From Octopus sinensis (Eukaryota), in the NCBI RefSeq assembly GCF_006345805.1, contig NC_043014.1:7192001-7256000 (forward strand): 64,000 nt of DNA, written 5' to 3'. The position numbers and the translations under genes were made by a program. Below are positions 1 through 57,870 of the stretch, piece by piece. The notes beneath the pieces are model-generated. The model saw nothing but the letters and a program-made list of their open reading frames with translations. It searched no databases and was not told the DNA's origin. Within the stretch, counting starts at the first letter, position 1. Each line of letters opens with the position of its first letter.

Positions 1-790
1 GGATGGATGAGGAGAGATGTGTGAAGAAGTGCTACTCTCAAACAGTTGAAGGAATCAGGGGGAGAGGTAGACCCAGGAAGACATGGGATGAGATAGTCAA
101 GCATGACCTCAGAGCGTTGGGCCTCACTGAGGCGAAGGACCGAGACCTCTGGAGATGTGCTGTGACTACTAAGACCCGGGATGCTTCCGGCACCAGTTCC
201 GCATACCCCCTGCCCATTCAAAGTACCTTGGATCTCGGAACATCTCGCTGTGCTTGAGGAGACCTGTTGAGTCAAGTGCATGTACATGAACATCGAACCA
301 AATATCAATGGAAACAGTAGTTGTGATACCTGTGCCGGTGACACATAAAAAGCACCATCCGAACGTGGCCGTTGCCAGTGCAGCCTCGACTGGCTTCTGT
401 GCCGGTGGCACATAAAAAGCACCATCCGAACGTGACCGATGCCAACCCCACCTCGAATGGCTTCTGTGCCAGTGGCACATCAAAAGCACCATCCGAACGT
501 GGCCGATGCCAGCACCACCTCGACTGGCTTCTGTGCCGGTGGCACATAAAAAGCACCAACCGATCGTGGCCGATGCCAGACCCCTCTGGCACTTGTGCAG
601 GTGGCACGTAAAAAGCACCCACTACACTCGCGGAGTGGTTGGCGTTAGGAAGGGCATCCAGCTGTAGAAACACTGCCAGATCAGACTGGAGCCTGGAGCA
701 GCCCCTGGCTCCCCAGACCCCGGTCGAACTGTCCAACCCGTGCTAGCGCGGAAAACGGACGTTAAACGATGATGATGATGATGATGATGA
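1..790 (+). mobile_element. RTE-clade LINE 3' end: ORF2 C-terminal remnant (1-~190) running into a 3'UTR with ~57-60 bp cassettes and a (GAT)n tail
   Basis: Translation RCVKKCYSQTVEGIRGRGRPRKTWDEIVKHDLRALGL...DRDLWR matches the RTE C-terminal GRPRKTW motif. It is followed by repeated 'cataaaaagcaccatccgaacgtggcc' cassettes and a 'gacgttaaacgatgatgatg' tail. Confidence 0.85.
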
Positions 791-3544: not shown

Positions 3545-4039
3545 AAAAAAAATATGCACAACAAAAAACAAAGTTACGAAAATAAAAAAAAAAAAGGCAT
3601 TCCTTCGATAGAACTCGACAAAATCAAAACATTTTACTTCGGGTATTTCCGTGGGTTGTGGAGTATAGATATAACGAAATTATGCCAGCAATGTCTTATT
3701 TTAAAACTTGCAGATAAAAAAGAAAAAAGCCTTGCATGTTTGTTCTTAACTGTTTCATGTGTGGGATCTTTTCTAAATGATGGTCCCATGTGTGTATGTA
3801 AAATCCGCAAATTTCCAAGCAGAAAACAGAATCGAAGTCATTTTGCTTCCACGGAAATACCCGAAGTGAAACGTTTTGATTTTGTCGAGTTATATCGAAA
3901 GAATGCCAAAAAAAAAAAAAAAAGTTAGCGGCATGGTGAGGCACGAATGCCGACTTTTTTTTTTCGAGAAAAATAGTCTTCTAATTAAAATATGGTAGAG
4001 GTAAAGAATACGTACACCACCGGGTGTACAACGCTAAAT

Positions 4040-6153
4040 GGATACTACTAGCGAACAGTGGTCCCGGTGCGCGCACTCGCGCTAGCTAGTCGTAAGTAGT
4101 CGATCCTACAACGACTTGCGCGTATATTTAATATTATATTATATAATTTAGTCATTTATATCGGGTTTTTTTAAGAGTAGGAAGGTTATGATGGGAATTT
4201 GGCTGCTATTCTAGCACGTCAACACCGAAGCTGAGATGAAATTCGTCCCAGTTATATTGTGGTTGGGTACTACTAGCGAACAGTGGTCCCGGTGCGCGCA
4301 CTCGCGCTAGCTAGTCGTAAGTAGTCGATCCTACAACGACTTGCGCGTATATTTAATATTATATTATATAATTTAGTCATTTATATCGGGTTTTTTTAAG
4401 AGTAGGAAGGTTATGATGGGAATTTGGCTGCTATTTCTGGCACGTCAAGCCCCCAAGCTGAGATGAAATTCGTCCCAGTTATTATTGTTGGTTGGGTACT
4501 ACTAGCGAACAGTGGTCCCGGTGCGCGCACTCGCGCTAGCTAGTCGTAAGTAGTCGATCCTACAACGACTTGCGCGTATATTTAATATTATATTATATAA
4601 TTTAGTCATTTATATCGGGTTTTTTTAAGAGTAGGAAGGTTATGATGGGAATTTGGCTGCTATTTCTGGCACGTCAAGCACCCAAGCTGAGATGAAATTC
4701 GTCCCAGTTATATTGTTGGTGGGTACTACTAGCGAACAGTGGTCCCGGTGCGCGCACTCGCGCTAGCTAGTCGTAAGTAGTCGATCCTACAACGACTTGC
4801 GCGTATTTTAATATTATTTATATAATTTAGTCATTTATATCGGGTTTTTTTAAAGTAGGAAGTTATGATGGGAATTTGGCTGCTTTTCTGGCACGTCAAG
4901 CACCAAGCTGAGATGAAATTCGTTCCAGTTATATTGTTGGTTGGGTACTACTAGCGAACAGTGGTCCCGGTGCGCGCACTCGCGCTAGCTAGTCGTAAGT
5001 AGTCGATCCTACAACGACTTGCGCGTATATTTAATATTATATTATATAATTTAGTCATTTATATCGGGTTTTTTTAAGAGTAGGAAGGTTATGATGGGAA
5101 TTTGGCTGCTATTTCTGGCACGTCAAGCACCCAAGCTGAGATGAAATTCGTCCCAGTTATATTGTTGGTTGGGTACTACTAGCGAACAGTGGTCCCGGTG
5201 CGCGCACTCGCGCTAGCTAGTCGTAAGTAGTCGATCCTACAACGACTTGCGCGTATATTTAATATTATATTATATAATTTAGTCATTTATATCGGGTTTT
5301 TTTAAGAGTAGGAAGGTTATGATGGGAATTTGGCTGCTATTTCTGGCACGTCAAGCACCCAAGCTGAGATGAATTCGTCCCAGTTATATTGTGGTTGGGT
5401 ACTACTAGCGAACAGTGGTCCCGGTGCGCGCACACTCGCGCTAGCTAGTCGTAAGTAGTCGATCCTACAACGACTTGCGCGTATATTTAATATTATATTA
5501 TATAATTTAGTCATTTATATGGTTTTTTTAAGAGTAGGAAGGTTATGATGGGAATTTGGCTGCTATTTCTGGCACGTCAAGCACCCAAGCTGAGATGAAA
5601 TTCGTCCCAGTTATATGTTGTGGTTGGGTACTACTAGCGAACAGTGGTCCCGGTGCGCGCACTCGCGCTAGCTAGTCGTAAGTAGTCGATCCTACAACGA
5701 CTTGCGCGTATATTTAATATTATATTATATAATTAGTCATTTATATCGGGTTTTTTAAGAGTAGGAAGGTTATGATGGGAATTTGGCTGCTATTTCTGGC
5801 ACGTCAAGCACCCAAGCTGAGATGAAATTCGTCCCAGTTATATTGTTGGTTGGGTATTACTAGCGAACAGTGGTCCCGGTGCGTGCACTCGCACTAGCTA
5901 GTCGTAAGTAGTCGATCCTACAACGACTTGCGCGTATTTTTGTATTTCAAGGCTGAATACATATCAAAGGAAATTAAATAATATTTTTCAAACAAAGTAA
6001 ATAATTTTTTAAACTAATTAAATAAATTATTTTTATAAACAAACTAAGGTCAGGGTTAGGGTAAAAAAGTCGTTGTAGGATCGACTACTTACGACTAGCT
6101 AGCGCGGATGCGCAAGTGCGCGCACCGGGACCACTGTTCGCTAGTAGTTACCC
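4040..6153. repeat. Tandem array of ~227-bp units (9 direct copies of an ~85-bp motif) closed by one inverted copy
   Basis: 'ta(c/t)tactagcgaacagtggtcccggtgcgcgcac' starts at ~4043, 4268, 4497, 4724, 4946, 5174, 5400, 5629 and 5855; its reverse complement is at ~6068-6153. Confidence 0.95.
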
Positions 6154-6390: not shown

Positions 6391-6448
6391 CTAAAAGTTT
6401 GCAATCAGAAACCTGACATTGCTGTCCCAGACGAGGAAGTTCAGCCAT
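6391..6448 (-). CDS. ZFAND1: AN1-type zinc finger protein, first coding exon (MAELPRLGQQCQVSDCKLL-D); downstream exons not found in the window
   Basis: ATG at 6448-6446 in 'aaaaATGG' context and a phase-1 donor TAG|gtaagt at 6391/6390. The peptide resembles the N-terminus of ZFAND1 (MAEL.IGQHCQV..C...DFLP); the ZFAND2/AIRAP paralogue is not excluded. An acceptor 'ttacttttag|' 9 nt upstream of the ATG (exon start 6457) implies an upstream non-coding exon. Confidence 0.65.
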
Positions 6449-6742
6449 TTTTAAAAGCTAAAAGTAAAATAAACGGATTAAATTAAATAACTTTTTAGGT
6501 TTCTTGTTGCAAAACATCGCATATATAGACATATATATATAGAGAGAAACTATGTACACCTACATATGTACCTGTAACAGCGTGGACAATTAAATAGCAA
6601 ATGATTTAAAACGTTCATACACGCACACAATTTTTTTTTTTCGCGCGAATAGTTTCGAACCACAAGGGAAGAAACTGTATAATTCCTGCTTAGTTCTGTC
6701 TAGTTTGGAAAATAATAATTATGAGAGTAAATTATAATTATA

Positions 6743-7516
6743 TATTTCTTTACTGCCCACAAGGGCTAAAAATAGAGGGGACAAACAAGGACAGACAAAG
6801 GGATTAAGTCCATTACATCGACCCCAGTGCGTAACTGGTACTTAACTTATCGACCCCGAAAGGATGAAAGGCAAAGTCAACCTCGACGGAATTTGAGCTC
6901 AGACGAAATACCTATTTCTTTATTGCCCACAAGGGGCTAAACATAGAGGGGACAAACAAGGACAGACAAAGGGATTAAGTCGATTACATCGATCCCAGTG
7001 CGTAACTGGTACTTAATTTATCGACCACGAAAGGATGAAAGGCAAAGTCGACCTCGGCAGAATTTGAGCTCAGAACGTAACGACAGACGAAATACCTATT
7101 TCTTTACTACCCACAAGGGGCTAAACATAGAGGGGACAAACAAGGACAGACAAACGTATTTAGTCGATTACATCGACCCCAGTGCGAAACTGGTACTTTA
7201 TTTATCGACGCCGACAGGATGAAAGGCAAAGTCGACCTCGGCGGAATCTGAACTCAGAACATAGCGGCAGACGAAATACCTATTTCTTTATTGCTCACAA
7301 GGGGCTAAACATAGAGGGGACAAACAAGGACAGACACATGGATCAAGTCGATTACATCGACCCCAGTGCGTAACTGGTACTTAATTTACCGACCCCGAAA
7401 GGATGAAAGGTAAAGTCGACCTCGGCGGAATTTGAACTCAGAACGCAACGGCGGACGAAATACTGCTAAGCATTTCGCCCGGCCTGCTAACGTTTCTACC
7501 AGCTCGCCACCTTAAC
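6743..7516 (-). mobile_element. tRNA-derived SINE family B, one head plus 4 tandem bodies. Other copies ~6205-6350, 9957-10348, 10701-11105, 14445-14645, 34643-34858, 45810-46875, 50627-51234, 52215-52447, 53201-55638, 57150-57560
   Basis: On the - strand the head is 'ggcgagctggYagaa.cgttagca' and each ~184-bp body contains 'gagttcaaattc' (B-box-like). A perfect 20-bp TSD gagagtaaattataattata lies at 6723-6742 and 7517-7536. Confidence 0.9.
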
Positions 7517-7792
7517 GAGAGTAAATTATAATTATAATGATAATTATTATTATCACTTAATTACTAAGGCGGCGAGCTGGATAAAATGCATAGCGGAATT
7601 TTGTCTAATTTCACGTTTTAAGTTCAAATTTTGCTTGGGTCGGCTTTGCCCTTCATCCTTTCCAAATTCTTGATGAAGCGAGTACCAGTTAAAAACTGCC
7701 GTTCAAACCAAAAAGATCCAAAGAATACGTACACCCGGTGGTTAGAGTTAGGGTATTTGTTACGCCGAAAACCGGTGGTGTACGCATTCTTT

Positions 7793-8200
7793 GGATCTTT
7801 TCGGTTTGGACGGCAGTTTTTAACATAATTTCTAGGTAACTAAAAAAATATTAAACTTCGTATACTGGTAGAATGTGTTTTTAAAACATCTTTTTCTTTT
7901 GGCTTTATTGAGAAAATTCTATAGTTTGTAAGATATTTGTTGTTGTTTTTTCTTCACTTTCTGCAATTTCAACCAATCACTGACGTCTATTGAAGTAAAA
8001 AAAACATTCTGTGCAGTATGAATATGTCCCTCGTTTAAGAAACAAATTGGGTTTATTTACATTTGTGAAGAAAAAAGATACCCTGACCCTAACCCTAAAA
8101 GAGATTGAAATGCAATAGATCGATACTAGGGTCATAATTACGGGTGACAATTTTAATATGACACCGCTAGAAAAAACTGCCGTTCAAACCGAAAAGATCC
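7793..8200. mobile_element. MITE-like element with ~28-bp TIRs (GGATC...GATCC); an adjacent extra TIR copy forms a hairpin at 7688-7824
   Basis: 'ggatcttttcggtttggacggcagttttt' (7793) versus 'aaaaactgccgttcaaaccgaaaagatcc' (to 8200); related fragments lie at ~1200-1330. Confidence 0.7.
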
Positions 8201-8340
8201 TTCTCCTTTTCTCTTTCTTTTCATTCTGTCCGTGTCACTCTTTCTTTTTTTCTATTTTATTTTCATATTTTTTTCCCTCTTCCTTTTCTTCTCTTTTTCT
8301 TTGCATCACTTTTCTGTTATCCATTTCCTCTTTCTCTCCT

Positions 8341-8685
8341 TTCTCTCTGTCTTACCTTCCCTCTCTTTCCCTTCCTTCTCTCTGTCTTACCTTCCCTCTC
8401 TTTCCCTTCCTTCTCTCTGTCTTACCTTCGCTCTCTTTCCCTTCCTTCTCTCTGTCTTACCTTCCCTCTCTTTCCCTTCCTTCTCTCTGTCTTACCTTCC
8501 CTCTCTTTCCCTTCCTTCTCTCTGTCTTACCTTCCCTCTCTTTCCCTTCCTTCTCTCTGTCTTACCTTCCCTCTCTTTCTCTTCCTTCTCTCTGTCTTAC
8601 CTTCGCTCTCTTTCCCTTCCTTCTCTCTGTCTTACCTTCCCTCTCTTTCCCTTCCTTCTCTCTGTCTTACCTTCCCTCTCTTTCC
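8341..8685. repeat. 35-bp polypyrimidine/polypurine minisatellite, 10 copies
   Basis: Unit ttctctctgtcttaccttccctctctttcccttcc; 'cttacc' occurs at 8351, 8386, 8421, 8456, 8491, 8526, 8561, 8596, 8631 and 8666. Confidence 0.95.
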
Positions 8686-8800
8686 CGCGTTATTTACTGC
8701 CGAGCACTTCATTTAACCGGAAGCAAGGAGTCTTAGAGGACCATATGGCTGATGCAATATAAAATCCTCTCATTCGCTCTTTCACTAAATATTACTCGAT
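8686..8800. promoter_or_regulatory. Putative bidirectional promoter between the ZFAND-like gene (-) and EIF2S2 (+)
   Basis: A short unique segment between divergent genes, with an ETS-type motif ACCGGAAG at 8716-8723 and a TCT-initiator-like CTCTTTCA at 8777-8784. TSS positions are inferred, not observed. Confidence 0.45.
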
Positions 8801-8895
8801 CTGCGCTGGTCAAGACACAAAACAACAAAGTAGACATCAAATATAAACACACACACATACATACTTCATAAATTTAAGAAGAAATATCCTAAACA

Positions 8896-8913
8896 ATGGC
8901 TGATGACGAAGTG
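8896..8913 (+). CDS. EIF2S2: eIF2-beta coding exon 1 (MADDEV)
   Basis: aaacaATGG start context; donor GTG|gtaagt, phase 0, joins exon 2. Confidence 0.8.
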
Positions 8914-11900: not shown

Positions 11901-14039
11901 ATGTTTCTACGGCTGGATGCCCTTCCTAACGCCAACCACTCCATGAGTGTAGTGGTTGCTTTTTACGGCCCACCGTCACAGGTGCCAGATGGGGCTGGCA
12001 AACGGCCACGGTCGGATGGTGCTTTTTACGTGCCACCGGCATGGGGACCAGGCGAGGCTGCCAAACAGCCACTGTCGGACGGTGCTCTTTATGTGCCACC
12101 GGCACGGGGTCCAGGCGAGGCTGGCAAACGGCCACGGTCGGATGGTGCTTTTTATGTGCCACTGGCACGGGGGCCATGATTGGATGGTGCTTTTTACGTG
12201 CCACCGGTACGGGGGCCAGGCGAGGCTGGCAATGGCCACGATCGGATGGTGCTTTTTATGTGCCACCGGCATGAGGACCAGGCGAGGCTGGCAACGGCCA
12301 CGTTCGGATGGTTCACTTACGTGTCACCAGCACTGGTATCACAGCTACAATTTCCATTGATGTTGAGTTTCGTTAATTCCCAATTGTGTACCATTATTCC
12401 CTTGACCCAGATATTTTAATTTTTGTTTCATTTCTAAACTTTCTGATGTCTAAGGATAAATATTGAGCATTCCTACTAATGTGTATACCCCCCTCCCCGC
12501 TCCCGACTTTGTTGCCTCATAACTTCCAAAAAAAGTGGATAATTTTTAACGAAATTTTCAACAAATGCCAGCTAGATATTATACAAGGATTTGTTTGAAA
12601 GAATTTCTCCGAGGATTTCGGAAAATTCGCACGATCCGACTTTCTTTCCTTGTAACTTTCGGGAAAATGGGTGTTTTTTTTTTTTTTTTTTTTGATGAAA
12701 TTTTTTACAAATATCCTTCAAACAACATAGGTTGTAATTTTGGATAAATGGAGTTTCGGATCAGGAATCCCACATAATTTGGAATTTCTCTGTTTTGACT
12801 GGGATTTTTCCAATTTAATCTGCAGTATCTGAGCAGTATTTTTGAAAATTTCATTAAAAAGTATCCGTTTTTATGGAAGTTATGAAACAAAACAGTCGAG
12901 AGGGGTTAGGGTTAGGGTTGTTCCATTGAGTTTAAAAAATAATGAATCTGAATGCCTTGATGAAGCAGGCGTTCCAACTGAGACCATTCCTTGTCATTTC
13001 AAGAGAACAACATTACCCAATCATCATTGTTTAACGTCCGTTTTCCGTGCTAGCATGGGTTGGACGGTTCGACTGGGGTCTGGGAAGCAAGGAGGCTGCA
13101 CCAGGCTCCAGTCTGATCTGGCAGTGTTTCTACAGCTGGATGCCCTCCGTGAGGGTGGTGCGTGCTTTTTACATGCCACCGGCACAGGTGCCAGACGAGT
13201 CTGGCAAATGGCCACGATCGGTTGGTGCTTTTTACGTGCCACCAGCACAGAAACCTGCCAAGGCGGCGCTGGCATCGGCCACCTTCGGATGGTGCTTTTT
13301 ACATGCCACCTGGAACAGAAGCCAGTCAAGGCGGCGCTGGCATCAACCACGTTCGGATGGTGCTTTTTACGTGTCACTGGCACAGAGGAACAAATTGTCA
13401 AAATTGTAGCAGAAAAGATAATTCCTCTCTGGCAAAAGGCATCTATCTCTTGAGTCAGTTAAACCGAAAATCTTAAAACTTTTATCTAGACTACTAAGCA
13501 TTACTAAATCTGTGGAAAAAATGTGCCAGTGTTAAAGACAAAAAAAAAAGGGAATGCTTTTTATATGCCTCCAGCACAGGTGCCAGGGGTGGCTGACAAC
13601 GGCCACGATCGGTTGGTGCTTTTTACGTGCCACCAGCACAGAAGCCAGTCAAGGCAGTGTTGGCATTGGCCACGTTCGGATGGTCCTTTTTATGTGCCAC
13701 CGGCACAGAAGCCAGTCAAGGCAGCGCTGGCATCGGCCACGTTCGGTCCTTTTTACGTGCCTCCGGCACAGAAACCAGTCAAGATGGCGCGGGCATTGGC
13801 CTCGTTCAGATGGTCCTTTTTACATGGCACCGACATAGGTATCACAACTACAATTTCCATTTGATATTTATTTTGATGTTGATGTACTTGACTCAATAGG
13901 GCTCCTCAAGCACAGCAGGTCAAGGGCCACCAGCACATGTATTCTCCATTTCTTCAGATGGTTGAATGTGAGTATTCTTTCCATCACCTACTTATTTATC
14001 CATCATTTCTAGGGTCTTTTTCTCTCTTCTTCGTTTCAG

Positions 14040-22119: not shown

Positions 22120-23045
22120 TGCCATCAAAGTGACACTGGGGTACAATATACGAAGCCCAGTATACCCATCATGACTACCCGTCTGATAAGGGTACACCAG
22201 GCACATGCATCACAACCATATGTGCGCGACATGGTGATCTCATAACAAGATAAACAGCACATGACCTTGCGGGTGGGGCCCAGTTAGAATTTTGTTCTGG
22301 TTGGGTGACACTGGGCTAATATATACAAAGCCCAGTATACCCATCATGACTACCCGTCTGATAGGGGTACACCAGGCACATGCATCACAACCATATGTGC
22401 GCGACATGGTGATCTCATAACAAGATAAACAGCACATGACCTTGCGGGTGGGGCCCAGTTAGAATTTTCTTCTGGTTGGGTAACTCATCCCACTCAAAAG
22501 GTCCCTAATTTAGGGTTGTTTAAGGATGTTGAATGAAACACCCATGTTTCCAGAGGTGAATCATTCAAACCCTAAAGAATTCCTCTCAAAAGACGGCTAT
22601 GGTACTCCCCCACTACTTCTGCTCATGATCAGAGATGCACATATCGTCAGCCACTAAGGGACATGCTCAACTGGTTACGGTCAAACAACTGACAAGCAAA
22701 TCTGTGGTATTGAGCAGAATATTTGCCGTAACCCATCTTTTATACCAAGACAAAACAATGTACATGATAACATTTCCAGTCAGTTAAGATCAGAAGCCAC
22801 GAGAACCACTGCCTGGTACTGCATCAGGGCATTATTATTATTATTATTATTATTATTATCATCATCATTATTATCATTATCATCATCATTATTATTATTA
22901 TCATCATTATTATTATCATTATTATTATTATCATCATTATTATTATCAATATTATTATTATTATTATTATTATCATAATCATTATCATTATTATCATCAT
23001 CATCATTATTATTATCATCATTATTATTATTATTATTATTATTAT
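22120..23045. mobile_element. Repeat element with an internal ~176-bp tandem duplication (22131-22480), ending in an (ATT/ATC)n tract (22830-23045)
   Basis: 'gtgacactggg...cccatcatgactacccgtctgata...ggggcccagttagaattt' is present twice. The family identity (probable non-LTR 3'UTR) is not confirmed. Confidence 0.55.
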
Positions 23046-23253
23046 TGGCAAGCTGGCAGAATCATTAGCATACTGGCCAAAGTGCTTTGTAGTATCTTGT
23101 CTCCCACTACGTTCCAAGTTCAAATTCTGCCAAGGTCAACTTTGCCTTTCGTCCTTGGGTCAATGTAATCAACTCATCCCCTCCCCCAAAATTGCTGCCC
23201 TTCTACCAAATTTTGAAACCATTATTGTTATTATTATTATTTCTTGTTTTTAG

Positions 23254-25284: not shown

Positions 25285-26389
25285 TTAACGTCCGCTTTCC
25301 ATGCTAGCATGGGTTGGACGATTTGACTGAGGTCTGGTGAACCAGACTCCAATCTGATCTGGCAGTGTTTCTACAGCTGGATGCCCTTCCTAACGCCAAC
25401 CACTCCGAGAGTGTTGTGGGTGCTTTTACGTGCCACCGGCACAAGGGCCGGTTTGGTGGTACTGGCAACAGCCACACCCAAATGGTGCTTTTTATGTGCC
25501 ACTTGCACAGGAGCCAGTCCAGCGGCACTGGTGACGACCTCGCTCGAATGTTTCACGTGCCACCAGCACAAGTGCTAGTAAGGCGACGTGGTAACGATCA
25601 CGCTTGAATGGTGTGCTTAACGTGCCATTGGCACGAAGGCCAGCTTGTTGCTCTGGCAACGATCTCACTCGTTTGGTACTCTTAGCGCTGCACCAGCAAC
25701 GGATGCCAGTCACTGACTTTGTTCAATGACGATAACAATTATGATGTGTGTGTTTGTATGTTTACATGTAAATGTTGATATCTCATGACTTCCTTTGAAC
25801 TAAATGTTGGATATAGTTTACTTTAACCCTTTAGCACTTAAAACCCTAACCCTAACATATTTATGTTCAAACAAGCCATATCTGGCCTTTCCCACTTACT
25901 CTACTGTGTCATTCTAAAAATAAATTAACCACATGGGCAAAATCTTGAAGCTATGAGATAATGCATGATTAATTCAATGCAACGGGAATAAATTAGGAAT
26001 ACATTTACCAGAATAATCTAAACACTAATGGTTTAAATTCCTTGTTGGCATTCTGACCACTTGCTCTGCACTATCAAAGACCAGTGGAGACATTATAAAG
26101 TTCTTTAGTTCACAAGACAGGTATAACAGGCAAGCATCCAGGCATAAGGCATTGCTTCAAATATATCACCCTCACAACTCCTGTTAGATTTTGAGAAGAG
26201 GTGCTGGTGGCACGTAAAAAGCACCATCCGATCGTGGCCGTTTGCCAGCTTCGTCTGGTCTCCGTGCCGGTGGCACGTAAAAAGCTCCATCCGATTTGTG
26301 ACACCAGCATCAGTTGTCAAGCAATGCTAGGGGGACAAACAAAGACACACAAACACACACACGCATATACATATATATATATATATGTA

Positions 26390-27905: not shown

Positions 27906-28932
27906 GTGAGTAGACACTGTTTTGATTCTAAAATCTGTCAGCATTTGTAAGGTGGTTTTTTTTTTTGTTTTTTTTTTTCATATTTTGTTTCTCCTCTTTT
28001 CCCTACCATAATTATAGTTCTTTCTATTATAGGCACAAAGCCTGAAATATTTTAATGGGGTTGGGGCAAGTTAATTACAACGACCCCACTTCTCAAATGG
28101 TACTTAATTTATCGACCCCCGAGACGATGATGGGCAAAGTCGACCTTGGCGGAATTTGAACTCAGAACATAAAGACTGACGAAATGCTGTAAGCATTTTG
28201 CCCGGCTTGCTAATGATTCTGCCAGCTTGCTGCCACCACCATCATCATCATAATAATAACAACAACAATAAGGATAATGATGGTTTTTTAAATAGTTCCT
28301 CTTAATTTTTTCCATTTTGTGGAATTACATGGGTCTTGCTAGTAATAATGGCCGATGACAGTACTGACTGATTGGCACCTGTGCCAATGGATCATTAAAA
28401 GCACCATTCGAGCGTGATCGTTGCCAGGGCCACAGACTGGCTCCCATGCCGGTGGCACGTAAAAAGCACCATTCAAGCATGATCATTGCCAGCGTCACCT
28501 CACTGGCTCCTGTGCTGGTGGCACGTAAAAACAAAAAGCAATACATTTGTAATCATTTGTCAAAGAGTGAGTACATCTTTTTGAGACACTATATATACAC
28601 CAGGCTTCTTTCAGATTCCATCTACTAAATCCACTCACAAGGCTTTGGTCAGCCCTAGGCTATAGTAGAAGACACTTGCCCAAGGTGCCCTGCAGTGGGA
28701 CTGAACCCAGAACCATGTGGTTGGGAAGCAAGCTTCATATATACAGCAGGCTTCCTTCAGTTTCCGTCTACCAAATCCACTCACAAGGCTTTGGTCAGCC
28801 CAAGGCTATAGTAGAAGACACTTACCTAAGATTCCATGCAGTAGGACTGAACCCTGAACCATGTGGTTGGTTGGCAAGCTACTTACCACACAGCCACTCC
28901 TGCACTTCAATGATTTTTTTTTTCTTTTCCAG

Positions 28933-31443: not shown

Positions 31444-32049
31444 ATCACAGCATTGTCCTCAATATTTCTCTTTCTCTCTCTTGTGCCTACACATTCAATA
31501 TTTCTTCACACATTCTATTCTTCTCCTTAATTGACAACGTTTTAGAATCCTGTAATTTTTTTTACTCCCACTATCAAAGCGTTTTCAAACACCATCTGAG
31601 CGTGGCCGTTCACCAGGCTCATCTGACCCCCGTGCTGGTGGCACGTAAAAAACACCATCCGAGCGTGGCTGTTCGCCAGCCTTGTCTGGCACCGGTGTCG
31701 GTGGCATGTAAAAAGCACCCACTACACTCACGGAGTGGTTGGCGTTAGGAAGGGCATCCAGCCGTAGGAACACTGCCAGATCAGACTGGAGCCTAGTGCA
31801 GCCTTCTGGCTTCCCAGACCCCAGTTGAACCGTCCAACCCATGCTAGCATGGAAAGCAGACGTTAAACGATAATAATGATGATGATGATGATTTCTCTCT
31901 CTTTTGTTTGTTTGTTTGTGTTTCCTTGTCTTGGAATTGCAGGGGGATTTGGAACGTAACACCTGCAATAGTCAAGGGATTACTGTGTATTAAGTAATCT
32001 GGATGTGAAACAGTTAATTCAGTTTGCTTTTTTAACTTTTGACGGATAT

Positions 32050-32340: not shown

Positions 32341-33135
32341 ATCATCATCATCATCATCGTTTAATGTCTGCTTTCCATGCTAGCATGGGTTGGACGGTTT
32401 AACTGGGGTCTGGGAAGCCAGAAGGCTGCACCAGGCCCAGTCAGATCTGGCAGTGTTTCTACAGCTGGATGCCCTTCCTAGTGCCAGACGAGGCTGGCAA
32501 ATGGCCACACTCGGATGGTGCTTTTTACGTGCCACCGGCATGGAGTCCAGGCGAGGCTGGTAACGGCCACGATCGGATGGTGTTTGTTACGTGCCACCGG
32601 CACGGAGGCCAGGCAAGGCTGGCAACGGCCACGATCGGATGGTGTTTGTTACGTGCCACCGGCACGGAGGCCAGGCGATGCGGTGCTGGCAACGGCCACG
32701 TTCGGATGGTTCTCTTAAGTGCCACCGGCACTGGTATCACAACTACAAATTCCATTGACGTTGATCGATTTCGATTTTGATGAGGACAAATATGCATCAA
32801 ATGTAAATAATGTACCCTAATCTTTGTTTAGACATCTTTCTCGGAGAAGGAAGTTTTGAAGATATCACCTGCCTAATTGCAAAGCTGGAGATCTTGTTCT
32901 CCCTTGTTTTCTAGATTACCTGGCTTTGTTGGGGAGAGTGCCAGCAATGTTGAGCAAATTGTCATTGACTTTGAATATTTGCATTGGCATTGCTGACAGC
33001 CGTTGTCTCTAACGTCTCCGATAAGATCATTTCTCAATGGTCCTGTTTTTCTATTATGTCTGTCAAATGTAAATAATGTACATAATTCCTCACCTCTTAA
33101 GTATAGAATCAATTTGCTTTGTTTGTCTTTTACAG

Positions 33136-35493: not shown

Positions 35494-37908
35494 CGACGGG
35501 CTTCTTTCAGTTTCCGTCTACCAAATCCACTCACAAGGCTTTGATCGGCCCGAGGCTGTAGCAGAAGACACTTGCCCAAGGTGCCACGCAGTGGGACTGA
35601 ACCCGGAACCATGTGGTTGGTAAACAAGCTACTTACCACATAGCCACTCCTGCACCTATGTGTATGGTTAAATATTTTTTCAGGCTCTGCAACACAACAG
35701 AATTTTTTTAAATCCCTATTTTTGGTCAAATTTTGGATTTTAAGAGGTTGCATACAAATTGTCAAATATCTTGAGATTAATGATCATATTAAGCTTAGGG
35801 ATGGCTCACAAGCCAATAACCGGTCATGATATTGAATGCCAATATTTGGTACTCCATGTGATCTTGGTGAGTTTTTTTTCCAACGTACAAGAACATATTA
35901 AGATGTGTTTCATTTGAGTGAGAAAAAGAAAACGTAGTTAAGCTCCTTCAGTTAAACATCATCATCGTTTAACGTCCATTCTCCATGCTAGCATGGGTTG
36001 GACGGTTTGACCGGGGATCTGGGAAGCCAGAAGGTTGCACCAGGCTCCAGTCTGATCTGGCAGTGTTTCTACAGCTGGATGCCCTTCCTAACGCCAACCA
36101 CTCCGTGAGTGTAGTGGGTGCTTTTTACGTGCCACCGGCACAGAAGTCAGTAATGGCGGCGCTGGCATCAGCCACGTTCGGATGGTGCTTTTTACGTGCC
36201 ACCGGCACAGAAGCTAGTCAAGGCGGCGCTGGCATCAGCCACGTTCGGATGGTGCTTTTTACGTGCCACCTGGAACAGAAGCCAGTCGAGGCAGCACTGG
36301 CATCGGCCACGTTTGGATGGTGCTTTTTACGTGCCACCAGCACAGAGGAACAAATTGTCAAAATCGTAGCAGAAAAGATAATTCCTCTCTGGCAAAAGGC
36401 ATCCATCTCTTGTGTTGCAACTGAGTCAGTTAAACCGAAAATCTTAAAACTTTTAACCAAAGTACTAAGCATTACTAAATCTGTGGAAAAAATGTGCCAG
36501 TGTTAAAGACAAAAAAAAGGGGATTTCAAATTGAAAGGTAAAACAGCGATAATGAATTACAATTGTTTTGAACATAACAAACAATTAGCATTATGTCAGT
36601 TTAGGAATTTCTAAAACAACAAATCTTTGACTGTTTCGTTATTTATTTGAGAGTATGCTAATTACTCGTCTATGAAAAAAATTAATTGGCTTTGCCGGCC
36701 TCGCCTGGCCCCCGTTGCTGGTGGCACGTAAAGAGCACCATCCAATTGTGGCCGTTTGCCAGCCTTGTCTGGCAGCTGTGCCAGTGGCACGTAAAAAGAA
36801 CCATCCGACCGTGGCCGTTTGCCAGCCTCCCCTGGCACGTAAAAAGCACCCACTACACTCACGGAGTGGTTGGACATTAGGAAGGGCATCCAGCTGTAGA
36901 AACATTGCCAGATCAGACTGGAGCCTGGTGCAGCCTTCTGGCTCCCCAGACCCCAGTTGAACCGTCCAACCCATGCTAGCATGGAAAGTGGGCCCTAAAC
37001 GATGAACGATTACTGGAACGAAAAGGAATGCGCTGCAACGATTCGTATTATTTAGTCGCATGGAATTTACTAGGGGCCAATTTGTTCAACTGGACTCCTT
37101 TGTGCCAGTGATCCAGCATGGCCACAGTCTAATCACTGAAATGAGTAAAGATAATAAACAACACAGTTTGTTTTTGTTTAGTCTTTATTGTTGTTCAAGA
37201 CGCATTTGAGGGGAGGGGGTAAAACAACAGCTGTAGATATGAGGGTCATTGGGATCAGGGCTTTTTTTTTTGTATGTGAGGATTTCACATTGGTTACCTT
37301 ATTGGAAAATCAACAAAAGTGCCAGAGAAGTTATGGAAAGGGTGGAGACCTTCAGTCAACTGCCCTTCATAACAACAAGAAAACAGCTGGTATTTACTTA
37401 CTAAAAATGTTTAGTCTCAGTTAGTCTTGACTAAGAACTATGATCAAAGACATTCCAATCATGACCACCAAGCATAATTTTTATCTGAGGTGTATTTCCT
37501 CTTTTTAAAGATGGTATAAGCGGGGTAGAGTGGAGGCGCAATGGCCCAGTGGTTAGGGCAGCGGACTCGCGGTTTCGATTCCCAGACCGGGCGTTGTGAG
37601 TTTATTGAGCGTAAACACCTAAAGCTCCACGAGGCTCCAGCAGGGGATGGTGGTGATCCCTGCTGTACTCTTTCACCACAACTTTCTCTCACTCTTACTT
37701 CCTGTTTCTGTTGTACCTGCATTTCAAAGGGCCGGCCTTGTCACTCTCTGTGTCACGCTGAATATCCCCGAGAACTACGTTAAGGGTACACGTGTCTGTG
37801 GAGTGCTCAGCCACTTACACATTAATTTCACGAGCAGGCTGTTCCGTTGATTCGGATCAACCGGAACCTTCATCGGCGTAACCGACGGAGTGCTTCCTTC
37901 TTCCTAAG

Positions 37909-40544: not shown

Positions 40545-42555
40545 GGCAGACACCCATAAAATTATCAACCATCTTACAAACAATAACTCTGAGCACCTTT
40601 TCAAACTCCACCCGTCTAACACCCGTAGACATATTTACAAAGTCAGAAAACAGCACAGCTCCCATGACTTTAGGAAACATTTTTTCACGCTAAGAGTTGC
40701 TGAAGCATGGAACAAACTGCCGGCATCAGTTGTTAGTTGTCGGAGCACTGCATCCTTCAAAACTTCCATGCTTCCTGGGATTCGCCAACACTACACCTGA
40801 TTTTCTCCCCTCTATACACACGCTGATGCATGGAACAAACTGCCGGCATCGGTTGTTAGTTGTCAGAGCACTGCATCCTTCAAAACTTCCATGCTTTCTG
40901 AGATTCGCCAACACTACACCTGATTTTCTCCCCTCTATACACACGCTGAAGCATGGAACAAACTGCCGGCATCGGTTGTTAGTTGTCGGAGCACTGCATC
41001 CTTCAAAACTTCCATGCTTCCTGGGATTCGCCAACACTACACCTGATTTTCTCCCCTCTATACACACGCTGAAGCATGGAACAAACTGCCGGCATCGGTT
41101 GTTAGTTGTCGGAGCACTGCATCCTTCAAAACTTCCATGCTTCCTGGGATTCGCCAACACTACACCTGATTTTCTCCCCTCTATACACACGCTGAGGCAT
41201 GGAACAAACTGCCGGCATCGGTTGTTAGTTGTCGGAGCACTGCATCCTTCAAAACTTCCATGCTTCCTGGATTCGCCCACACTACACCTGATTTTCTCCC
41301 CTCTATACACACGCTGAGCATGGAACAAACTGCCGGCATCTGTTGTTAGTTGTCGGAGCACTGCATCCTTCAAAACTTCCATTCTTCCTGGGATTCGCCA
41401 ACACTACACCTGATTTTCTCCCCTCTATACACACGCTGAAGCCTGGAACAAACTGCCGGCATCGGTTGTTAGTTGTGGGAGCACTGCATCCTTCAAAACT
41501 TCCATGCTTCCTGGGATTCGCCAACACTACACCTGATTTTCTCCCCTCTATACACATGCTGAAAAATGGAACAAACTGCCGGCATCGGTTGTTAGTTGTG
41601 GGAGCACTGCATCCTTCAAAACTTCCATGCTTCCTGGGATTCGCCAACACTACACCTGATTTTCTCCCCTCTATACACATGCTGAAAAATGGAACAAACT
41701 GCCGGCATCGGTTGTTAGTTGTCGGAGCACTGCATCCTTCAAAACTTCCATGCTTCCTGGGATTCGCCAACACTACACCTGATTTTCTCCCCTCTATACA
41801 CACGCTGAAGCATGGAACAAACTGCCGGCATCGGTTGTTAGTTGTGGGAGCACTGCATCCTTCAAAACTTCCATGCTTCCTGGGATTTGCCAACACTACA
41901 CCTGATTTTCTCCCCTCTATACACACGCTGAAGCATGGAACAAACTGCCGGCATCGGTTGTTAGTTGTCGGAGCACTGCATCCTTCAAAACTTCCATTCT
42001 TCCTGGGATTCACCAACACTACACCTGATTTTCTCCCCTCTATACACACGCTGAAGCATGGAACAAACTGCCGGCATCGGTTGTTAGTTATCGGAGCACT
42101 GCATCCTTCAAAACTTCCATGCTTCCTGGGATTCGCCAACACTACACCTGATTTTCTCCCCTCTATACACACGCTGAAGCATGGAACAAACTGCCGGCAT
42201 CGGTTGTTAGTTGTCGGAGCACTGCATCCTTCAAAACTTCCATGCTTCCTGGGATTCGCCAACACTACACCTGATTTTCTCCCCTCTATACACACGCTGA
42301 AGCATGGACAAACTGCCGGCATCAGTTGTTAGTTGTCGGAGCACTGCATCCTTCAAAACTTCCATGCTTCCTGGGATTCGCCAACACTACACCTGATTTT
42401 CTCCCCTCTATACACACACAAGCATGTATCTGACTCATACATTGTTCGCTTTCCAGACATTTTTACATTACTGCATATACTCTATACGCACTTTCTGACA
42501 AGTTGTGGTGCACCTGAGCACTGTATACAATAATTTCATTACTATTACTGTAGCA
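40545..42555 (+). mobile_element. CR1-type LINE 3' end carrying an internal tandem array
   Basis: ORF remnant ...FRKHFFTLRVAEAWNKLPASVVSCRSTASFKTSML...HYT*; the 3'UTR resumes after the array and ends 'aataatttcattactattac'. Confidence 0.85.
40701..42420 (+). repeat. 123-bp tandem array, 14 copies
   Basis: Unit 'tgaagcatggaacaaactgccggcatcggttgttag...ccctctatacacacgc' starts at 40701, 40824, 40947, 41070, 41193 ... 42175, 42298. Confidence 0.97.
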
Positions 42556-44384: not shown

Positions 44385-45060
<676 letters not shown>

Positions 45061-45746: not shown

Positions 45747-47546
45747 CTACAAAAAAAAAAAGACAAAAAAAATACATAAATAAAAAACAACAACAACAAC
45801 AATAATCCTTTCTACTTTCCCCAGAGCGTAACTGGTACTTATTTAATCGACTCTGAAAGGATGAAAGACAAAGTCGACCTCAGCAGAATTTGAACTCAGA
45901 ACATAGAGGCAGACAAAATACCTATTTCTTTACTACCCACAAGGGGCTAAACATAGAGAGGACAAACAAGGACAGACACACGGATTAAATTGATTATATC
46001 AACCCCAGTGCGTAACTGGTACTTATTTAATTGACCCCCCGAAAGGATGAAAGGCAAAGTCGACCTTGGCAGAATTTGAACTCAGAACGTAGAGGCAGAC
46101 GAAATACCTATTTCTTTACTACCCACAAGGGGCTAAACACAGAGAGGACAAACAAGGACAGACACACGGATTAAGTTGATTATATCAACCCCATTGCGTA
46201 ACTGGTACTTAATTTATCGACCCCAAAAGGATGAAAGGCAAAGTCGACCTCGGCGGAATTTGAACTCAGAACATAGAGGCAGACGAAATACCTGTTTCTT
46301 TACTACCCACAAGGGGCTAAACACAGAGAGGACAAACAAGGACAGACACACGGATTAAGTTGATTATATCAACCCCAGTGCGTAACTGGTACTTATTTAA
46401 TTGACTCCCGAAAGGATGAAAGGCAAAGTCGACCTCGGCGGAATTTGAACTCAGAATGTAGAGGCAGACGAAATACCTATTTCTTTACTACCCACAAGGG
46501 GCTAAACACAGAAGAGACAAACAAGGACAAACAGATTAAGTCCATTACATTGACCCCAGTGTGTAACTGGTACTTATTTAATTGACCCCCGAAAGGATGA
46601 AAGGCAAAGTCAACCTCGGCAGAATTTGAACTCAGAATGTAACGGCAGAGACGAAATACCTATTTCTTTACAACCCACAAGGGGCTAAACACAGAAGGGA
46701 CAACCAAGGACAGACAAATAGATTAAGTCCATTACATTGACTCCAGTGTGTAACTGGTACTTAATTTATCGACCCCGAAAGGATGAAAGGCAAAGTCGAC
46801 CTCAGAACGTAGTGGCAGATGAAATACCGCTAAGCATTTCGCCCGGCGTGCTAACGATTCTGCCAGCTCGCCGCCTTCTGTACAAACACATACCATCATC
46901 ATCAACATTGTTGATGGCTGTTATTAAAGGTAAAGTCGACCTCGACGGAATTTGAACTCAGAACCTAACAGCAGACGAAATACCACTCAGCCAAATTATG
47001 GTCAGTTTAAACACCAAAGGGTTAAATCAGTCGAAGCAAAGAGATGTATTTTGGTAGAAAGATGGTAACGAAGCTGTCCTACATCATCATCATCGTTTAA
47101 CGTCCGCTTTCCATGCTAGCATGGGTTGGACGGTTCAACTGGGGTCAGTGAAGCTGGAAGGCTTCATCAGGCCCAGTCAGATCTGGCAGTGTTTCTACAG
47201 CTGGATGCCCTTCCTAACGCCAACCACTCCGTGTGTGTAGTGGGTGCTTTTTATGTTCCACCCGCACAGGTGCCAGACAGAGCTGGCAAACGGCCACGAA
47301 CGGATGGTGCTTTTACGTGCCACCAACACGGGGGCCAGACAGAGCTGGCAAACGGCCACGAAACGGATGGTGCTTTTACGTGCCACCAACACGGGGGCCA
47401 GACAGAGCTGGCAAACGGCCACGAACGGATGGTGCTTTTACATGCCACCAACACGGGGGCCAGACAGAGCTGGCAAACGGCCACGAAACGGATGGTGCTT
47501 TTACGTGTCACCGGCAATAATGAGAGAAGGGAGAGAAAATATCTAC

Positions 47547-52772: not shown

Positions 52773-53200
52773 CTGCAAGAAAAAAACCAGAAAGTGGAAT
52801 GATTAAGTAAATGTTAGAAGAAGACCAACATTTTTGAGGTTGATCAGTTATAAGCAAATCATCATCATCATCGTTTAACGTCCGCTTTCCATGCTGGCAT
52901 GGGTTGGAAGAGTATATATAATGTAATAGAAACCGGTTCAACCCCTTGACAACGGTTGATGCAAATATGCGATCACACTTTTGCTTGCCTACCCGTGGTT
53001 AACGTAAATATACGATGTAGAGCTGCCCTACATCTATCAGAAACTTTTTAGTGGCTGATGTATGTTTACGTTCACTATCATGTACTTTATATCTTCAGAT
53101 GCACGCGCTCGCCGTCCCGTGCATTATCTTAGCCATTTTAGGATACGTCATGAGACTAGCAGGAGACCAGTGGCATGCGAATACTTTACATGTATAATAC

Positions 53201-57085: not shown

Positions 57086-57870
57086 CTGCAATCAGAAGGA
57101 GAACAGTGAGAAATGGTTATGGCATGGAATAGCAGGGTAATATACATATATTTCTTTATTGCCCACAAGGGGCTAAACACAGAGGGGACAAACAAGGACA
57201 GACAAAGGGATTAAGTCGATTACATCGACCCCAGTGCGTAACTGGTACTTATTTAATCGACCCCGAAAGGATGAAAGGCAAAGTCGACCTCCGCGGAATT
57301 TGAACTCAGAACGTAAAGACAGACGAAATAACTATTTCTTTACTACCCATAAGGGGCTAAACACAGAGGGGACAAACAAGACAGACCAAGGGATTAAGTC
57401 GATTACATCGACCCCAGTGCGTAACTGGTACTTAATTTATCGACCCCGAAAGGATGAAAGGCAAAGTTGGCCTCGGCAGAATTTGAACTCACAACGTAAC
57501 GACAGACGAAATATGGCTACGCATTTCGCCCGGCGTGCTAACGTTTCTGCCAGCTCGCCGACTATATTGTACATAGTCGCAGGTGTGGCTGTGTGGGCTA
57601 AGAAGCTTGCTTCTCAACCACATGGTTCCAGGTTCAGTCCCACTGCGTGGCACCTTGGGCAAGTGGCTTCTCCTACAGCCTCAGGCTGACCAAACCCTAG
57701 AGCGGATTTGGTAGATGGAAATTGAAAGAAGCCCATCATACACACACATACACACACATATATATATATAAAGTTAATCCAAACATGAAAGCACAAAAAA
57801 ACACAACAACGCGAGGACGTGGAACAAATATAGTATTATTGGACGCTCAGGAAAGAAGGAAAGAAGGAGG

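What the first reader, a model, noticed from the sequence alone, without database searches (positions are those of the whole stretch)
8341..8685. Ten tandem consensus 5' splice donors next to the inferred bidirectional promoter
Seen: read on the - strand, each 35-bp unit is agagagggAAG|GTAAGAcagagagaaggaagggaa, a near-consensus U1 site. It is repeated 10 times (intron starts at 8670, 8635 ... 8355), contains no AUG, and begins ~15 nt inside the unique promoter segment. The ZFAND-like exon at 6457 needs an upstream donor. Inference: the first exon-intron junction of the ZFAND-like gene has itself been tandemly amplified, offering up to ten 5'UTR isoforms in 35-nt steps, or a U1-loading array that could favour transcription in that direction. 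The tract is also an almost uninterrupted purine/pyrimidine strand asymmetry with possible triplex potential beside the EIF2S2 TSS, and a likely VNTR.
Basis: partly seen in the sequence, partly recalled or inferred. Interest (0 to 1): 0.75.

Follow-up and report, generated by a model that had tools for sequence, protein, structure and literature searches.

The report
Minisatellite that repeats a splice donor
A 35-base purine-rich unit holding a strong splice-donor motif is repeated ten times between two head-to-head animal genes; it is a real array of an already known kind, and nothing available here shows that any of the donors is used.

Summary
A 35-bp unit is repeated 10.3 times at 8329-8686 with 97% identity. 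On the - strand every unit reads AAG|GTAAGA, with the G of GT at 8670, 8635 ... 8355. The array has no ATG and is 94% purine. These donors score in the top 0.3% of GT sites in the window. They are the only GT sites of 6 bits or more on the - strand between the EIF2S2 start region and the ZFAND1-like ATG exon. That exon is preceded by a respectable acceptor at 6458/6457.

The ten donors are one motif copied by array growth, not ten independent events. The last growth step was a 5-unit block duplication. A shuffled unit carries a donor this strong in 2% of trials.

The best reading (about 0.5) is a minisatellite that reiterates the exon-1 donor of the ZFAND1-like gene. This kind is known from human F7, IFI6, CBS, LMNB2 and PDGFA, where only the first one to three donors are used. 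Ten isoforms or a selected U1-loading array are therefore unlikely. The triplex potential is weak.

No transcript, orthologue or population data could be reached, so donor usage, TSS positions and VNTR status remain untested. Interest is modest.

The parts
8329..8686 (-). 35-bp minisatellite: ten full units (8329-8678) plus an 8-nt partial unit (8679-8686). The - strand unit is GAGGGAAG|GTAAGACAGAGAGAAGGAAGGGAAAGA.
   Evidence: TRF gives period 35, 10.3 copies, 97% matches. With up to 3 mismatches there are 10 matches against 0 expected.
8350..8673 (-). Ten donor-consensus motifs AAG|GTAAGA. The G of GT is at 8670, 8635, 8600, 8565, 8530, 8495, 8460, 8425, 8390 and 8355.
   Evidence: These are the only AAGGTAAGA 9-mers in the window. 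Each scores 10.42 bits on a generic donor PWM, placing them among the 24 best of 7800 GT sites. They are the only - strand GT sites of 6 bits or more between 8800 and 6460.
8190..8328 (-). Non-periodic polypurine tract (polypyrimidine on the + strand) in which the array is embedded. It abuts a transposon-end fragment at 8172-8200.
   Evidence: The + strand is 86-92% pyrimidine in 50-nt windows. Identity to the unit is only 14-16 of 35. The 29-bp terminal repeat is shared with 7691-7719 and 7793-7821.
8687..8895 (.). Unique segment between the array and the EIF2S2 ATG; the presumed core promoter region. It holds CCGGAAG (ETS-like) at 8717-8723, TATAAAA at 8758-8764 and the pyrimidine-rich CTCTTTC at 8777-8783. 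On the - strand there are ATGs at 8773, 8744 and 8712.
   Evidence: The segment is unique within the window. The promoter role is inference only.
8896..8913 (+). EIF2S2 first coding exon (MADDEV), with donor GTG|GTAAGT (G at 8914). It joins exon 2 at 14040 (LPFDPSLKKKKKKKKTPF...).
   Evidence: The exon sequences, their translations and the flanking intron ends are. Downstream exons match human EIF2S2 in tblastn (E down to 2e-28). The donor scores 9.5 bits.
6391..6457 (-). ZFAND1-like first coding exon. The acceptor is ttttag| (AG at 6459-6458) and the ATG is at 6448-6446. It encodes MAELPRLGQQCQVSDCKLL and ends in donor TAG|GTAAGT (G at 6390).
   Evidence: tblastn against human ZFAND1 gives E 0.039. 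The two best PDB hits are ZFAND1 N-termini, 1wys and 7yab, with E 0.22 and 0.77. The acceptor ranks 97th of 7368 AGs. The donor scores 10.48 bits.
6458..8670 (-). Putative intron 1 of the ZFAND1-like gene if the first array donor is used. It consists mostly of repeat copies and carries poly(A) hexamers on the - strand at 8261, 8157, 8057, 7909, 7292, 7202 and 6924.
   Evidence: Repeat coverage is 6733-7719 (up to 47 copies in the window) and 7793-8004.

Best explanation
The tract is a young polypurine/polypyrimidine minisatellite. It grew by slippage or unequal exchange in a purine tract about 95 bp upstream of the likely EIF2S2 core promoter. Its monomer contains a 5' splice site on the strand of the neighbouring, divergently oriented ZFAND1-like gene.

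Most likely mechanism: the monomer contains the real exon-1/intron-1 junction of that gene, so the junction has been reiterated. This is what is seen in the human F7 IVS7, IFI6, CBS IVS13, LMNB2 and PDGFA minisatellites. Under this reading, - strand transcripts start in the unique segment (roughly 8690-8780). U1 snRNP binds them at the cap-proximal donor (8670, perhaps also 8635 and 8600). They are then spliced across a transposon-filled intron of about 2.2 kb to the acceptor at 6458/6457, nine bases before the ZFAND1-like ATG. The other copies are silent intronic pseudo-donors. The amplification is a neutral by-product of tract instability, not an adaptation.

Shown here: the array, the strength of the motif, its uniqueness in the interval, the quality of the acceptor and the orientation of the genes.

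Inferred: the TSS positions, the use of any donor, the preference for the first donor (from mammalian precedent) and neutrality.
For: - Array and donor coordinates are confirmed.
- The donors score 10.42 bits. Only 14 other GT sites of 7800 in the window, on both strands, score as high. Those include the real-looking ZFAND1-like exon donor at 6390 and the EIF2S2 donor at 27906.
- On the - strand between 8800 and 6460, no other GT site reaches 6 bits.
- The AG at 6458 ranks in the top 1.3% of AGs and lies within the range of the EIF2S2 acceptors. It sits 9 nt before an ATG in a good context (AAAAATGG), with an in-frame TAG just upstream.
- The genes are head to head.
- The variant 'gagCgaag' recurs exactly 175 bp apart, in the units with GT at 8600 and 8425. 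This indicates a recent 5-unit block duplication. The edge unit is the most diverged, as is usual in minisatellites.
- The array RNA is unstructured, so all donors are accessible.
- Precedent for this kind of array, and for use of only the first donors, is in PMC1557585.
Against: - There is no transcript evidence of any kind.
- The ZFAND1 identity rests on 19 residues (E 0.039 and 0.22). The rest of the gene lies outside the window.
- A shuffled unit of the same composition carries an equally strong donor in 2% of trials. Other arrays in this window also repeat donor-like motifs, though weaker ones. Chance is therefore not excluded in a repeat-rich genome.
- The ZFAND1-like transcript could start in the unique 270 bp just upstream of its ATG exon, which holds TA-rich TATA-like runs.
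- A TSS upstream of 8712 would place an AUG in frame with the ORF through donor 8670. That would add 17 residues which conserved ZFAND1 N-termini lack.
- The head-to-head pairing is absent in a distant relative's contig.
- The first-donor rule comes from mammalian internal exons, not from first exons of this animal.
Confidence: 0.5

Rival explanations
1. Incidental intergenic minisatellite. A purine-rich unit that happens to contain GGTAAG expanded in the upstream region of EIF2S2. The ZFAND1-like gene starts elsewhere, for instance in the unique 6460-6730 segment, and the donors are never part of a stable mRNA.
For: 2% of shuffled units (0.7% of random 35-mers) carry a donor this strong, and tandem arrays are very numerous here: one search gives 80 TRF rows in 64 kb. 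Several other arrays repeat donor-like motifs. Poly(A) hexamers start 94 nt after the last donor. TATA-like TA runs lie 60-90 nt upstream of the ZFAND1-like ATG. No conserved EIF2S2/ZFAND1 pairing is seen in L001.
Against: The array sits where a divergent TSS partner would be expected. It points at a gene whose ATG exon carries a top-1.3% acceptor 9 nt upstream of the ATG. It provides the only strong donors in the interval. Three such coincidences together are less likely than a real exon 1.
Confidence: 0.3
2. Selected U1-loading array. The multiplicity of strong 5' splice sites just downstream of the antisense TSS recruits U1 snRNP. This blocks early termination (the U1-PAS axis, Restrictor) and makes the shared promoter productive towards the ZFAND1-like gene. 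Copy number would tune expression.
For: There are ten accessible strong U1 sites in 350 nt. Poly(A) hexamers lie just downstream that would need suppression. In mammals a strong 5' splice site in the initially transcribed region relieves Restrictor independently of splicing (PMC12211998), and U1 sites distinguish sense from antisense transcripts (Almada 2013, as cited in PMC11230626).
Against: In those studies one promoter-proximal 5' splice site suffices. Near-identity of the units (97%) and the block duplication point to recent mechanical expansion, not a conserved design. There is no comparative or population evidence. The mechanism has not been shown in this animal group.
Confidence: 0.07
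3. DNA-level promoter element for EIF2S2 and/or its neighbour. The tract would act as a cluster of GAGAG and GGAA motifs or as a non-B-DNA (H-DNA or R-loop prone) tract. It would keep the region nucleosome-poor or bind GAGA- or ETS-type factors. The donor motif would be irrelevant.
For: The array has 21 GAGAG and 26 GGAA motifs. It lies about 95 bp upstream of the putative TATA/CTCTTTC core and next to a canonical CCGGAAG. This is the largest purine/pyrimidine tract in the window, about 500 bp. It has 29-nt perfect purine runs.
Against: Perfect mirror symmetry is limited to 8-nt arms with a 5-nt spacer in each unit. Non-mirror pyrimidine repeats give little H-DNA signal (PMC9171763). No such tract lies upstream of EIF2S2 in two distant relatives. 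Factor binding cannot be tested here.
Confidence: 0.08
4. The copy number is an assembly artefact (collapse or expansion of a short repeat), so the 'ten' is not biological.
For: Near-identical 35-bp units are hard to assemble from short reads.
Against: The units carry ordered variants (two C variants 175 bp apart, one A variant, a diverged edge unit), as expected for a real resolved array. At 358 bp the array is spanned by any long read.
Confidence: 0.05

Closest known systems
Human F7 intron 7 minisatellite (37 bp x 5-9), whose first monomer spans the exon 7/intron 7 boundary (Borensztajn et al. 2006, PMC1557585)
   Same: It is a tandem array of about 35-bp monomers. Each carries an identical 5' splice site in the orientation of the gene. 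The unit size and copy number are similar, and the F7 array is polymorphic.
   Different: The F7 donors are weak (UGG|gugggu) and follow an internal coding exon. Their use was shown experimentally: only the first is used. Here the donors are near-consensus and would follow a non-coding or barely coding first exon at a promoter. Usage is unknown.
IFI6 (6-16) intron 2, CBS IVS13 31-bp VNTR, LMNB2 100-bp and PDGFA 81-bp minisatellites that reiterate an exon/intron junction (listed in PMC1557585; Turri 1995, PMC306954)
   Same: A minisatellite supplies many identical donors. In IFI6 and CBS the authentic donor and the next two are used.
   Different: All of these lie inside gene bodies of vertebrates. 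None lies at a divergent promoter or is a polypurine tract.
Promoter-proximal 5' splice site / U1 snRNP control of early termination (U1-PAS axis, telescripting, Restrictor; PMC12211998, PMC11230626, Almada 2013 PMC3720719)
   Same: Strong U1 sites lie within a few hundred bases of a presumed antisense start, followed by poly(A) hexamers.
   Different: The known effect needs only one site. No natural amplified array has been described as an adaptation. The mechanism has been tested only in mammals.
Promoter-upstream VNTRs and purine-rich (GA)n or GGAA repeats acting at the DNA level (for example the insulin and MAOA promoter VNTRs, and GAGA elements; from my own knowledge, not checked here)
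   Same: A repeat array lies within a few hundred bases of a TSS, is purine/pyrimidine asymmetric and is probably variable in length.
   Different: Those act through factor binding or DNA structure, not splice signals. No binding or expression data exist here.

Membership tests
Minisatellite reiterating an exon-intron junction (F7 IVS7 / IFI6 / CBS type) | Head-to-tail array of monomers of roughly 10-100 bp | tested here: met
   Period 35, 10.3 copies, 97% matches; 10 in-register units.
Minisatellite reiterating an exon-intron junction (F7 IVS7 / IFI6 / CBS type) | Every monomer carries the same 5' splice-site sequence, in the orientation of the gene | tested here: met
   AAG|GTAAGA occurs 10 times on the - strand, at 10.42 bits each, in the same orientation as the ZFAND1-like exon.
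Minisatellite reiterating an exon-intron junction (F7 IVS7 / IFI6 / CBS type) | The first monomer spans a junction that is really used in mRNA | not testable with these tools
   No transcripts of this species were reachable. The protein database holds no same-species sequence and the metagenome scans were empty.
Minisatellite reiterating an exon-intron junction (F7 IVS7 / IFI6 / CBS type) | A downstream acceptor of the same gene to which the donor is joined | tested here: inconclusive
   The AG at 6458 ranks 97th of 7368 (top 1.3%), comparable with the EIF2S2 acceptors. Its use has not been observed.
Minisatellite reiterating an exon-intron junction (F7 IVS7 / IFI6 / CBS type) | Copy-number polymorphism (VNTR) | not testable with these tools
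   Only one haplotype is available. The block duplication and 97% identity suggest recent turnover.
Bidirectional (divergent) promoter gene pair | Two genes head to head on opposite strands | tested here: met
   The EIF2S2 ATG is at 8896 on the + strand. The ZFAND1-like ATG is at 6448 on the - strand. The ZFAND1 identity is weak (E 0.04-0.2).
Bidirectional (divergent) promoter gene pair | Transcription start sites less than about 1 kb apart | not testable with these tools
   The ATG-to-ATG distance is 2.45 kb. TSS positions are unknown. Only motif-level hints exist (TATAAAA 8758, CTCTTTC 8777, CCGGAAG 8717).
H-DNA (intramolecular triplex) motif | Homopurine/homopyrimidine tract | tested here: met
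   The tract is 94% purine on the - strand, with seven perfect 29-nt purine runs.
H-DNA (intramolecular triplex) motif | Mirror symmetry with long uninterrupted arms and a short spacer | tested here: not met
   The best perfect mirror is GGAAGGGA-n5-AGGGAAGG, with 8-nt arms, once per unit. Non-mirror pyrimidine repeats give little H-DNA signal (PMC9171763).
Sense-like transcript under the U1-PAS axis | Strong 5' splice site in the initially transcribed region | tested here: inconclusive
   Strong sites are present, but the - strand TSS is unknown.
Sense-like transcript under the U1-PAS axis | Depletion of poly(A) signals downstream of the start | tested here: not met
   AATAAA or ATTAAA lies at 8261, 8157, 8057 and 7909 on the - strand, within 100-450 nt of the last donor.
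Protein-coding tandem repeat | Unit length a multiple of three, one frame maintained, recognisable family | tested here: not met
   35 is not a multiple of 3. The - strand has TAA in all three frames. The 192-aa + strand ORF (8158-8736) comes from the absence of stop codons in a pyrimidine tract and has no Pfam match.

The most novel reading that the evidence does not exclude
The junction was amplified under selection. A tenfold array of near-consensus U1 sites placed just after the antisense start of a housekeeping promoter would act as an anti-termination platform. It would turn divergent transcription into a productive mRNA for the neighbouring ZFAND1-like gene. Repeat number would act as a heritable dial for the balance between the two genes.
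Probability: 0.07. Interest if true: 0.6.

Novelty: new member of a known kind. Interest (0 to 1): 0.3.

Why it matters
If the first donor is used, this is a non-vertebrate, promoter-side example of a minisatellite that reiterates a splice junction. It has much stronger donors than the classic F7 case. That would make it a natural test of how a spliceosome chooses among identical, fully accessible donors next to a cap. It could also test whether extra U1 sites change early termination at a divergent promoter. If the donors are not used, it is an ordinary purine-rich minisatellite. It is then a reminder that amplification multiplies any chance motif, so the copy number of a motif inside a repeat is not evidence of function.

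Tried and rejected
1. Transcripts or orthologues through the protein database. An EIF2S2 exon query returned only exon-sized ORFs of 84% identity or less, so the species is not in the collection.

2. Synteny in two distant relatives (L001, L002). EIF2S2 is found, but there is no ZFAND1 and no purine tract upstream. L001 has a glutathione-synthetase fragment upstream on the same strand. This is uninformative for this locus.

3. Exact-match scans of metagenome contigs for the unit, and for any DNA encoding the ZFAND1-like exon peptide, gave 0 hits.

4. Rfam and ARAGORN found no RNA family or tRNA in the window.

5. Coding repeat: rejected.

6. The array as the polypyrimidine tract of a + strand acceptor: rejected. 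The + strand of the array has no AG, and the first AG after it (8703) scores -4.4.

7. The array as part of a dispersed transposon: rejected. 8212-8837 is unique in the window apart from a weak 43-bp match.

8. The flanking purine tract as old decayed repeat copies: rejected. Identity to the unit is about 45%, and no GT is in register.

9. CpG-island style promoter evidence: none.

10. A literature search for the assembly accession of the closest relative, to name the taxon, gave no hit.

Full report
**What is there**

Tandem Repeats Finder reports one array at 8328-8686 with period 35, 10.3 copies, 97% matches and no indels. Read on the - strand in donor register, it is ten full units (8678 down to 8329). 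The unit consensus is GAGGGAAG|GTAAGACAGAGAGAAGGAAGGGAAAGA. An 8-nt partial unit (8686-8679) precedes them and abuts unique sequence.

The 9-mer AAGGTAAGA occurs ten times in the 64-kb window. All ten are on the - strand inside the array, with the G of GT at 8670, 8635 ... 8355. The whole unit with up to three mismatches matches ten times against none expected. Neither strand of the array has an ATG, and the - strand is 94% purine.

Two refinements apply. First, the purine tract extends to about 8190, but that part is not periodic: it shares 14-16 of 35 positions with the unit and has no GT in register. Second, the array region 8212-8837 is unique in the window, so it is not part of a dispersed element.

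**How the array grew**

Seven units are identical to the consensus.
- The variant gagCgaag occurs in the units with GT at 8600 and 8425. These lie exactly five units (175 bp) apart.
- The unit at 8600 carries one further change.
- The distal edge unit carries three changes.

This is the signature of a recent five-unit block duplication in an array with an older edge. It points to growth by slippage or unequal exchange. The ten donors are therefore one motif copied by the array. Their number is not independent evidence of function.

**Surroundings**

EIF2S2 lies on the + strand.
- Exon 1 is ATGGCTGATGACGAAGTG (8896-8913), with donor GTG|GTAAGT.
- It joins exon 2 at 14040. This gives MADDEV-LPFDPSLKKKKKKKKTPF, which parallels the human N-terminus.
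- Later exons match human EIF2S2 with E down to 2e-28.

On the - strand, an exon at 6457-6391 encodes MAELPRLGQQCQVSDCKLL.
- It resembles the ZFAND1 N-terminus (tblastn E 0.039).
- The two best hits in the whole PDB are the mouse and human ZFAND1 N-termini, with E 0.22 and 0.77.
- This identity is probable but weak. No further ZFAND1 exon lies in the window.

The two ATGs are 2.45 kb apart. The interval between them is mostly repeat copies: 6733-7719 with up to 47 copies in the window, 7793-8004, and a transposon-end fragment at 8172-8200.

The unique 8687-8895 segment holds CCGGAAG (8717), TATAAAA (8758) and CTCTTTC (8777). I read these as a likely EIF2S2 core promoter with a start near 8780-8790. 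This is inference from motifs only, and there is no CpG island.

**Are the donors good, and is anything else available?**

I used a generic metazoan donor matrix whose frequencies I recalled from textbook compilations, so the scores are approximate.
- The array donors score 10.42 bits, against a maximum of 12.5.
- Only 14 other GT sites of 7800 on both strands of the window score as high. Among them are the ZFAND1-like exon's own donor (6390) and an EIF2S2 donor (27906).
- On the - strand between 8800 and 6460, no other GT site reaches 6 bits. The best alternatives are 5.8 bits.
- The AG at 6458, nine bases before the ZFAND1-like ATG, ranks 97th of 7368 AGs. That is within the range of the EIF2S2 acceptors. 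A TTAAT branch-point candidate lies about 22 nt upstream, and an in-frame TAG precedes the ATG.
- The - strand RNA of the array is essentially unstructured (z = 0.04), so every donor would be accessible.

**Chance**

A mononucleotide shuffle of the unit carries a donor at least this strong, on either strand, in 2.0% of trials. A random 35-mer does so in 0.7%. Of 29 distinct arrays in the window, three others repeat a donor-like motif of at least 7 bits in every unit (9 x 7.2 bits in the 228-bp array, 2 x 8.2 bits in the 175-bp array, 2 x 9.5 bits in the 193-bp array). None is as strong or as dense.

In a genome this rich in tandem repeats, some arrays with strong donors must arise by chance. 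What argues against pure chance here is a conjunction of three things. The array sits where the divergent partner of the EIF2S2 start would lie. It points at a gene whose ATG exon looks like an internal exon. It supplies the only strong donors in between.

**Most likely mechanism**

I consider it most likely (about 0.5) that the monomer contains the real exon-1 donor of the ZFAND1-like gene, and that the junction has been reiterated. Transcripts would start on the - strand in the unique segment. They would then be spliced from the cap-proximal donor(s) to 6457.

This kind of array is already known. Borensztajn et al. (PMC1557585) describe the human F7 intron 7 minisatellite (37 bp x 5-9), whose first monomer spans the exon/intron boundary. 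They list IFI6, CBS, LMNB2 and PDGFA as further cases.
- In F7, LMNB2 and PDGFA only the authentic, most upstream donor is used.
- In IFI6 and CBS the authentic donor and the next two are used.

By that precedent, ten 5'UTR isoforms in 35-nt steps are not expected.

One further detail bears on this. A - strand ATG at 8712 is in frame with the ZFAND1-like ORF only through donor 8670, which would add MKCSAVNNAGKRGKLLK. Through any other donor it opens a short upstream ORF that stops at a TAA of the array or in exon 2. The isoforms would therefore differ in consequence if the start lies upstream of 8712. The same ATG is also a mild argument against a start that far upstream, because conserved ZFAND1 proteins begin at MAEL.

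**Rivals**

1. Incidental intergenic minisatellite, with the ZFAND1-like start near its ATG exon (about 0.3). Supporting points are the chance rate above, TA-rich TATA-like runs 60-90 nt upstream of the ATG, and poly(A) hexamers starting 94 nt after the last donor.
2. Selected U1-loading array (about 0.07). In mammals a strong 5' splice site in the initially transcribed region relieves early termination independently of splicing (PMC12211998). U1 sites distinguish sense from antisense transcripts (Almada 2013, cited in PMC11230626). However, one site suffices in those studies, and the near-identity of the units indicates recent mechanical growth.
3. DNA-level element (about 0.08). The array has 21 GAGAG and 26 GGAA motifs and is the largest purine/pyrimidine tract in the window. 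Perfect mirror symmetry is limited to 8-nt arms, though, and non-mirror pyrimidine repeats give little H-DNA signal (PMC9171763).
4. Assembly artefact in copy number (about 0.05). The ordered unit variants argue against it.

**What could not be done**

The protein collection contains no sequence of this species. The best EIF2S2 exon hit is 84% identical, and all hits are exon-sized ORFs. Two distant relatives' contigs show EIF2S2 but neither ZFAND1 nor a purine tract upstream. Two metagenome scans were empty. Donor usage, TSS positions, conservation and polymorphism all remain untested. The source organism was not identified.

**Verdict**

This is a real, well-described 35-bp minisatellite that multiplies a strong splice-donor motif beside a probable divergent promoter. 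It is best filed as a new member of the known class of junction-reiterating minisatellites, with membership unproven on the decisive criterion of donor usage. The more ambitious functional readings are not excluded but have no support. Interest is modest (0.3).

Noticed in passing
window 8745-8754 and 8896-8905: The 10-mer ATGGCTGATG occurs only twice in the window. One copy is the EIF2S2 start codon. The other lies 151 bp upstream, just before the TATAAAA, where it would read ATG GCT GAT GCA ATA TAA. This may be a small duplication of the start region, or an upstream ORF if transcription starts further upstream.
   Followed up: partly
window 8712 (- strand): This ATG is in frame with the ZFAND1-like ORF through the first array donor only, giving a 17-residue extension MKCSAVNNAGKRGKLLK. 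Through all other donors it gives a short upstream ORF that ends at a TAA of the array or in exon 2.
   Followed up: yes
window 7691-7821 and 8172-8200: A palindromic MITE-like element has 29-bp terminal inverted repeats (aaaactgccgttcaaacc.aaaagatcc) around a telomere-like core. A third copy of the terminal repeat directly abuts the start of the pyrimidine tract. Telomere-like CCCTAA/TTAGGG fragments also lie at 8087-8098, 6052-6061, 12906-12917 and 25844-25855.
   Followed up: partly
window 4039-5941: A 228-bp unit is repeated 8.4 times at 97% identity, in the region that would be the intron after the ZFAND1-like ATG exon. Each unit carries CCG|GTGCGC (7.2 bits) on the + strand.
   Followed up: no
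window 40699-42417: A 123-bp unit is repeated 14 times at 97% identity. Its nature is unknown.
   Followed up: no
window 6743-7463, 45819-46803, 50677-51222, 53196-55589, 57149-57513: A 184-bp SINE-like unit, with a 154-bp variant, forms tandem arrays at several places and has up to 47 matches in the window. ARAGORN and Rfam do not recognise it as a tRNA or any other family.
   Followed up: partly
window 330-619, 2288-2572, 11957-12333, 13210-13832, 28397-28531, 31587-31719, 32483-32731, 36117-36838, 47243-47512, 51678-51894: A second abundant repeat of 62-68 bp (GGTGCTTTTTACGTGCCACCGGCACG...) occurs in short tandem arrays on both strands throughout the window.
   Followed up: no
window 8158-8736 (+ strand): A 192-aa ATG-initiated ORF runs through the whole pyrimidine tract. 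It exists only because a pyrimidine strand cannot form stop codons. It has no Pfam match and should not be annotated as a gene.
   Followed up: yes
L001 968-1144: In a distant relative's contig, the ORF called upstream of EIF2S2 on the same strand matches glutathione synthetase. The EIF2S2/ZFAND1-like head-to-head pairing is therefore not universal.
   Followed up: partly
window 44587-45012, 22831-23046, 59003-59438: Long simple repeats are present: (AT)n of about 430 bp, (ATT)72, and an (ATCACC)n/(ATCACCATCATCACC)n tract of about 435 bp.
   Followed up: no
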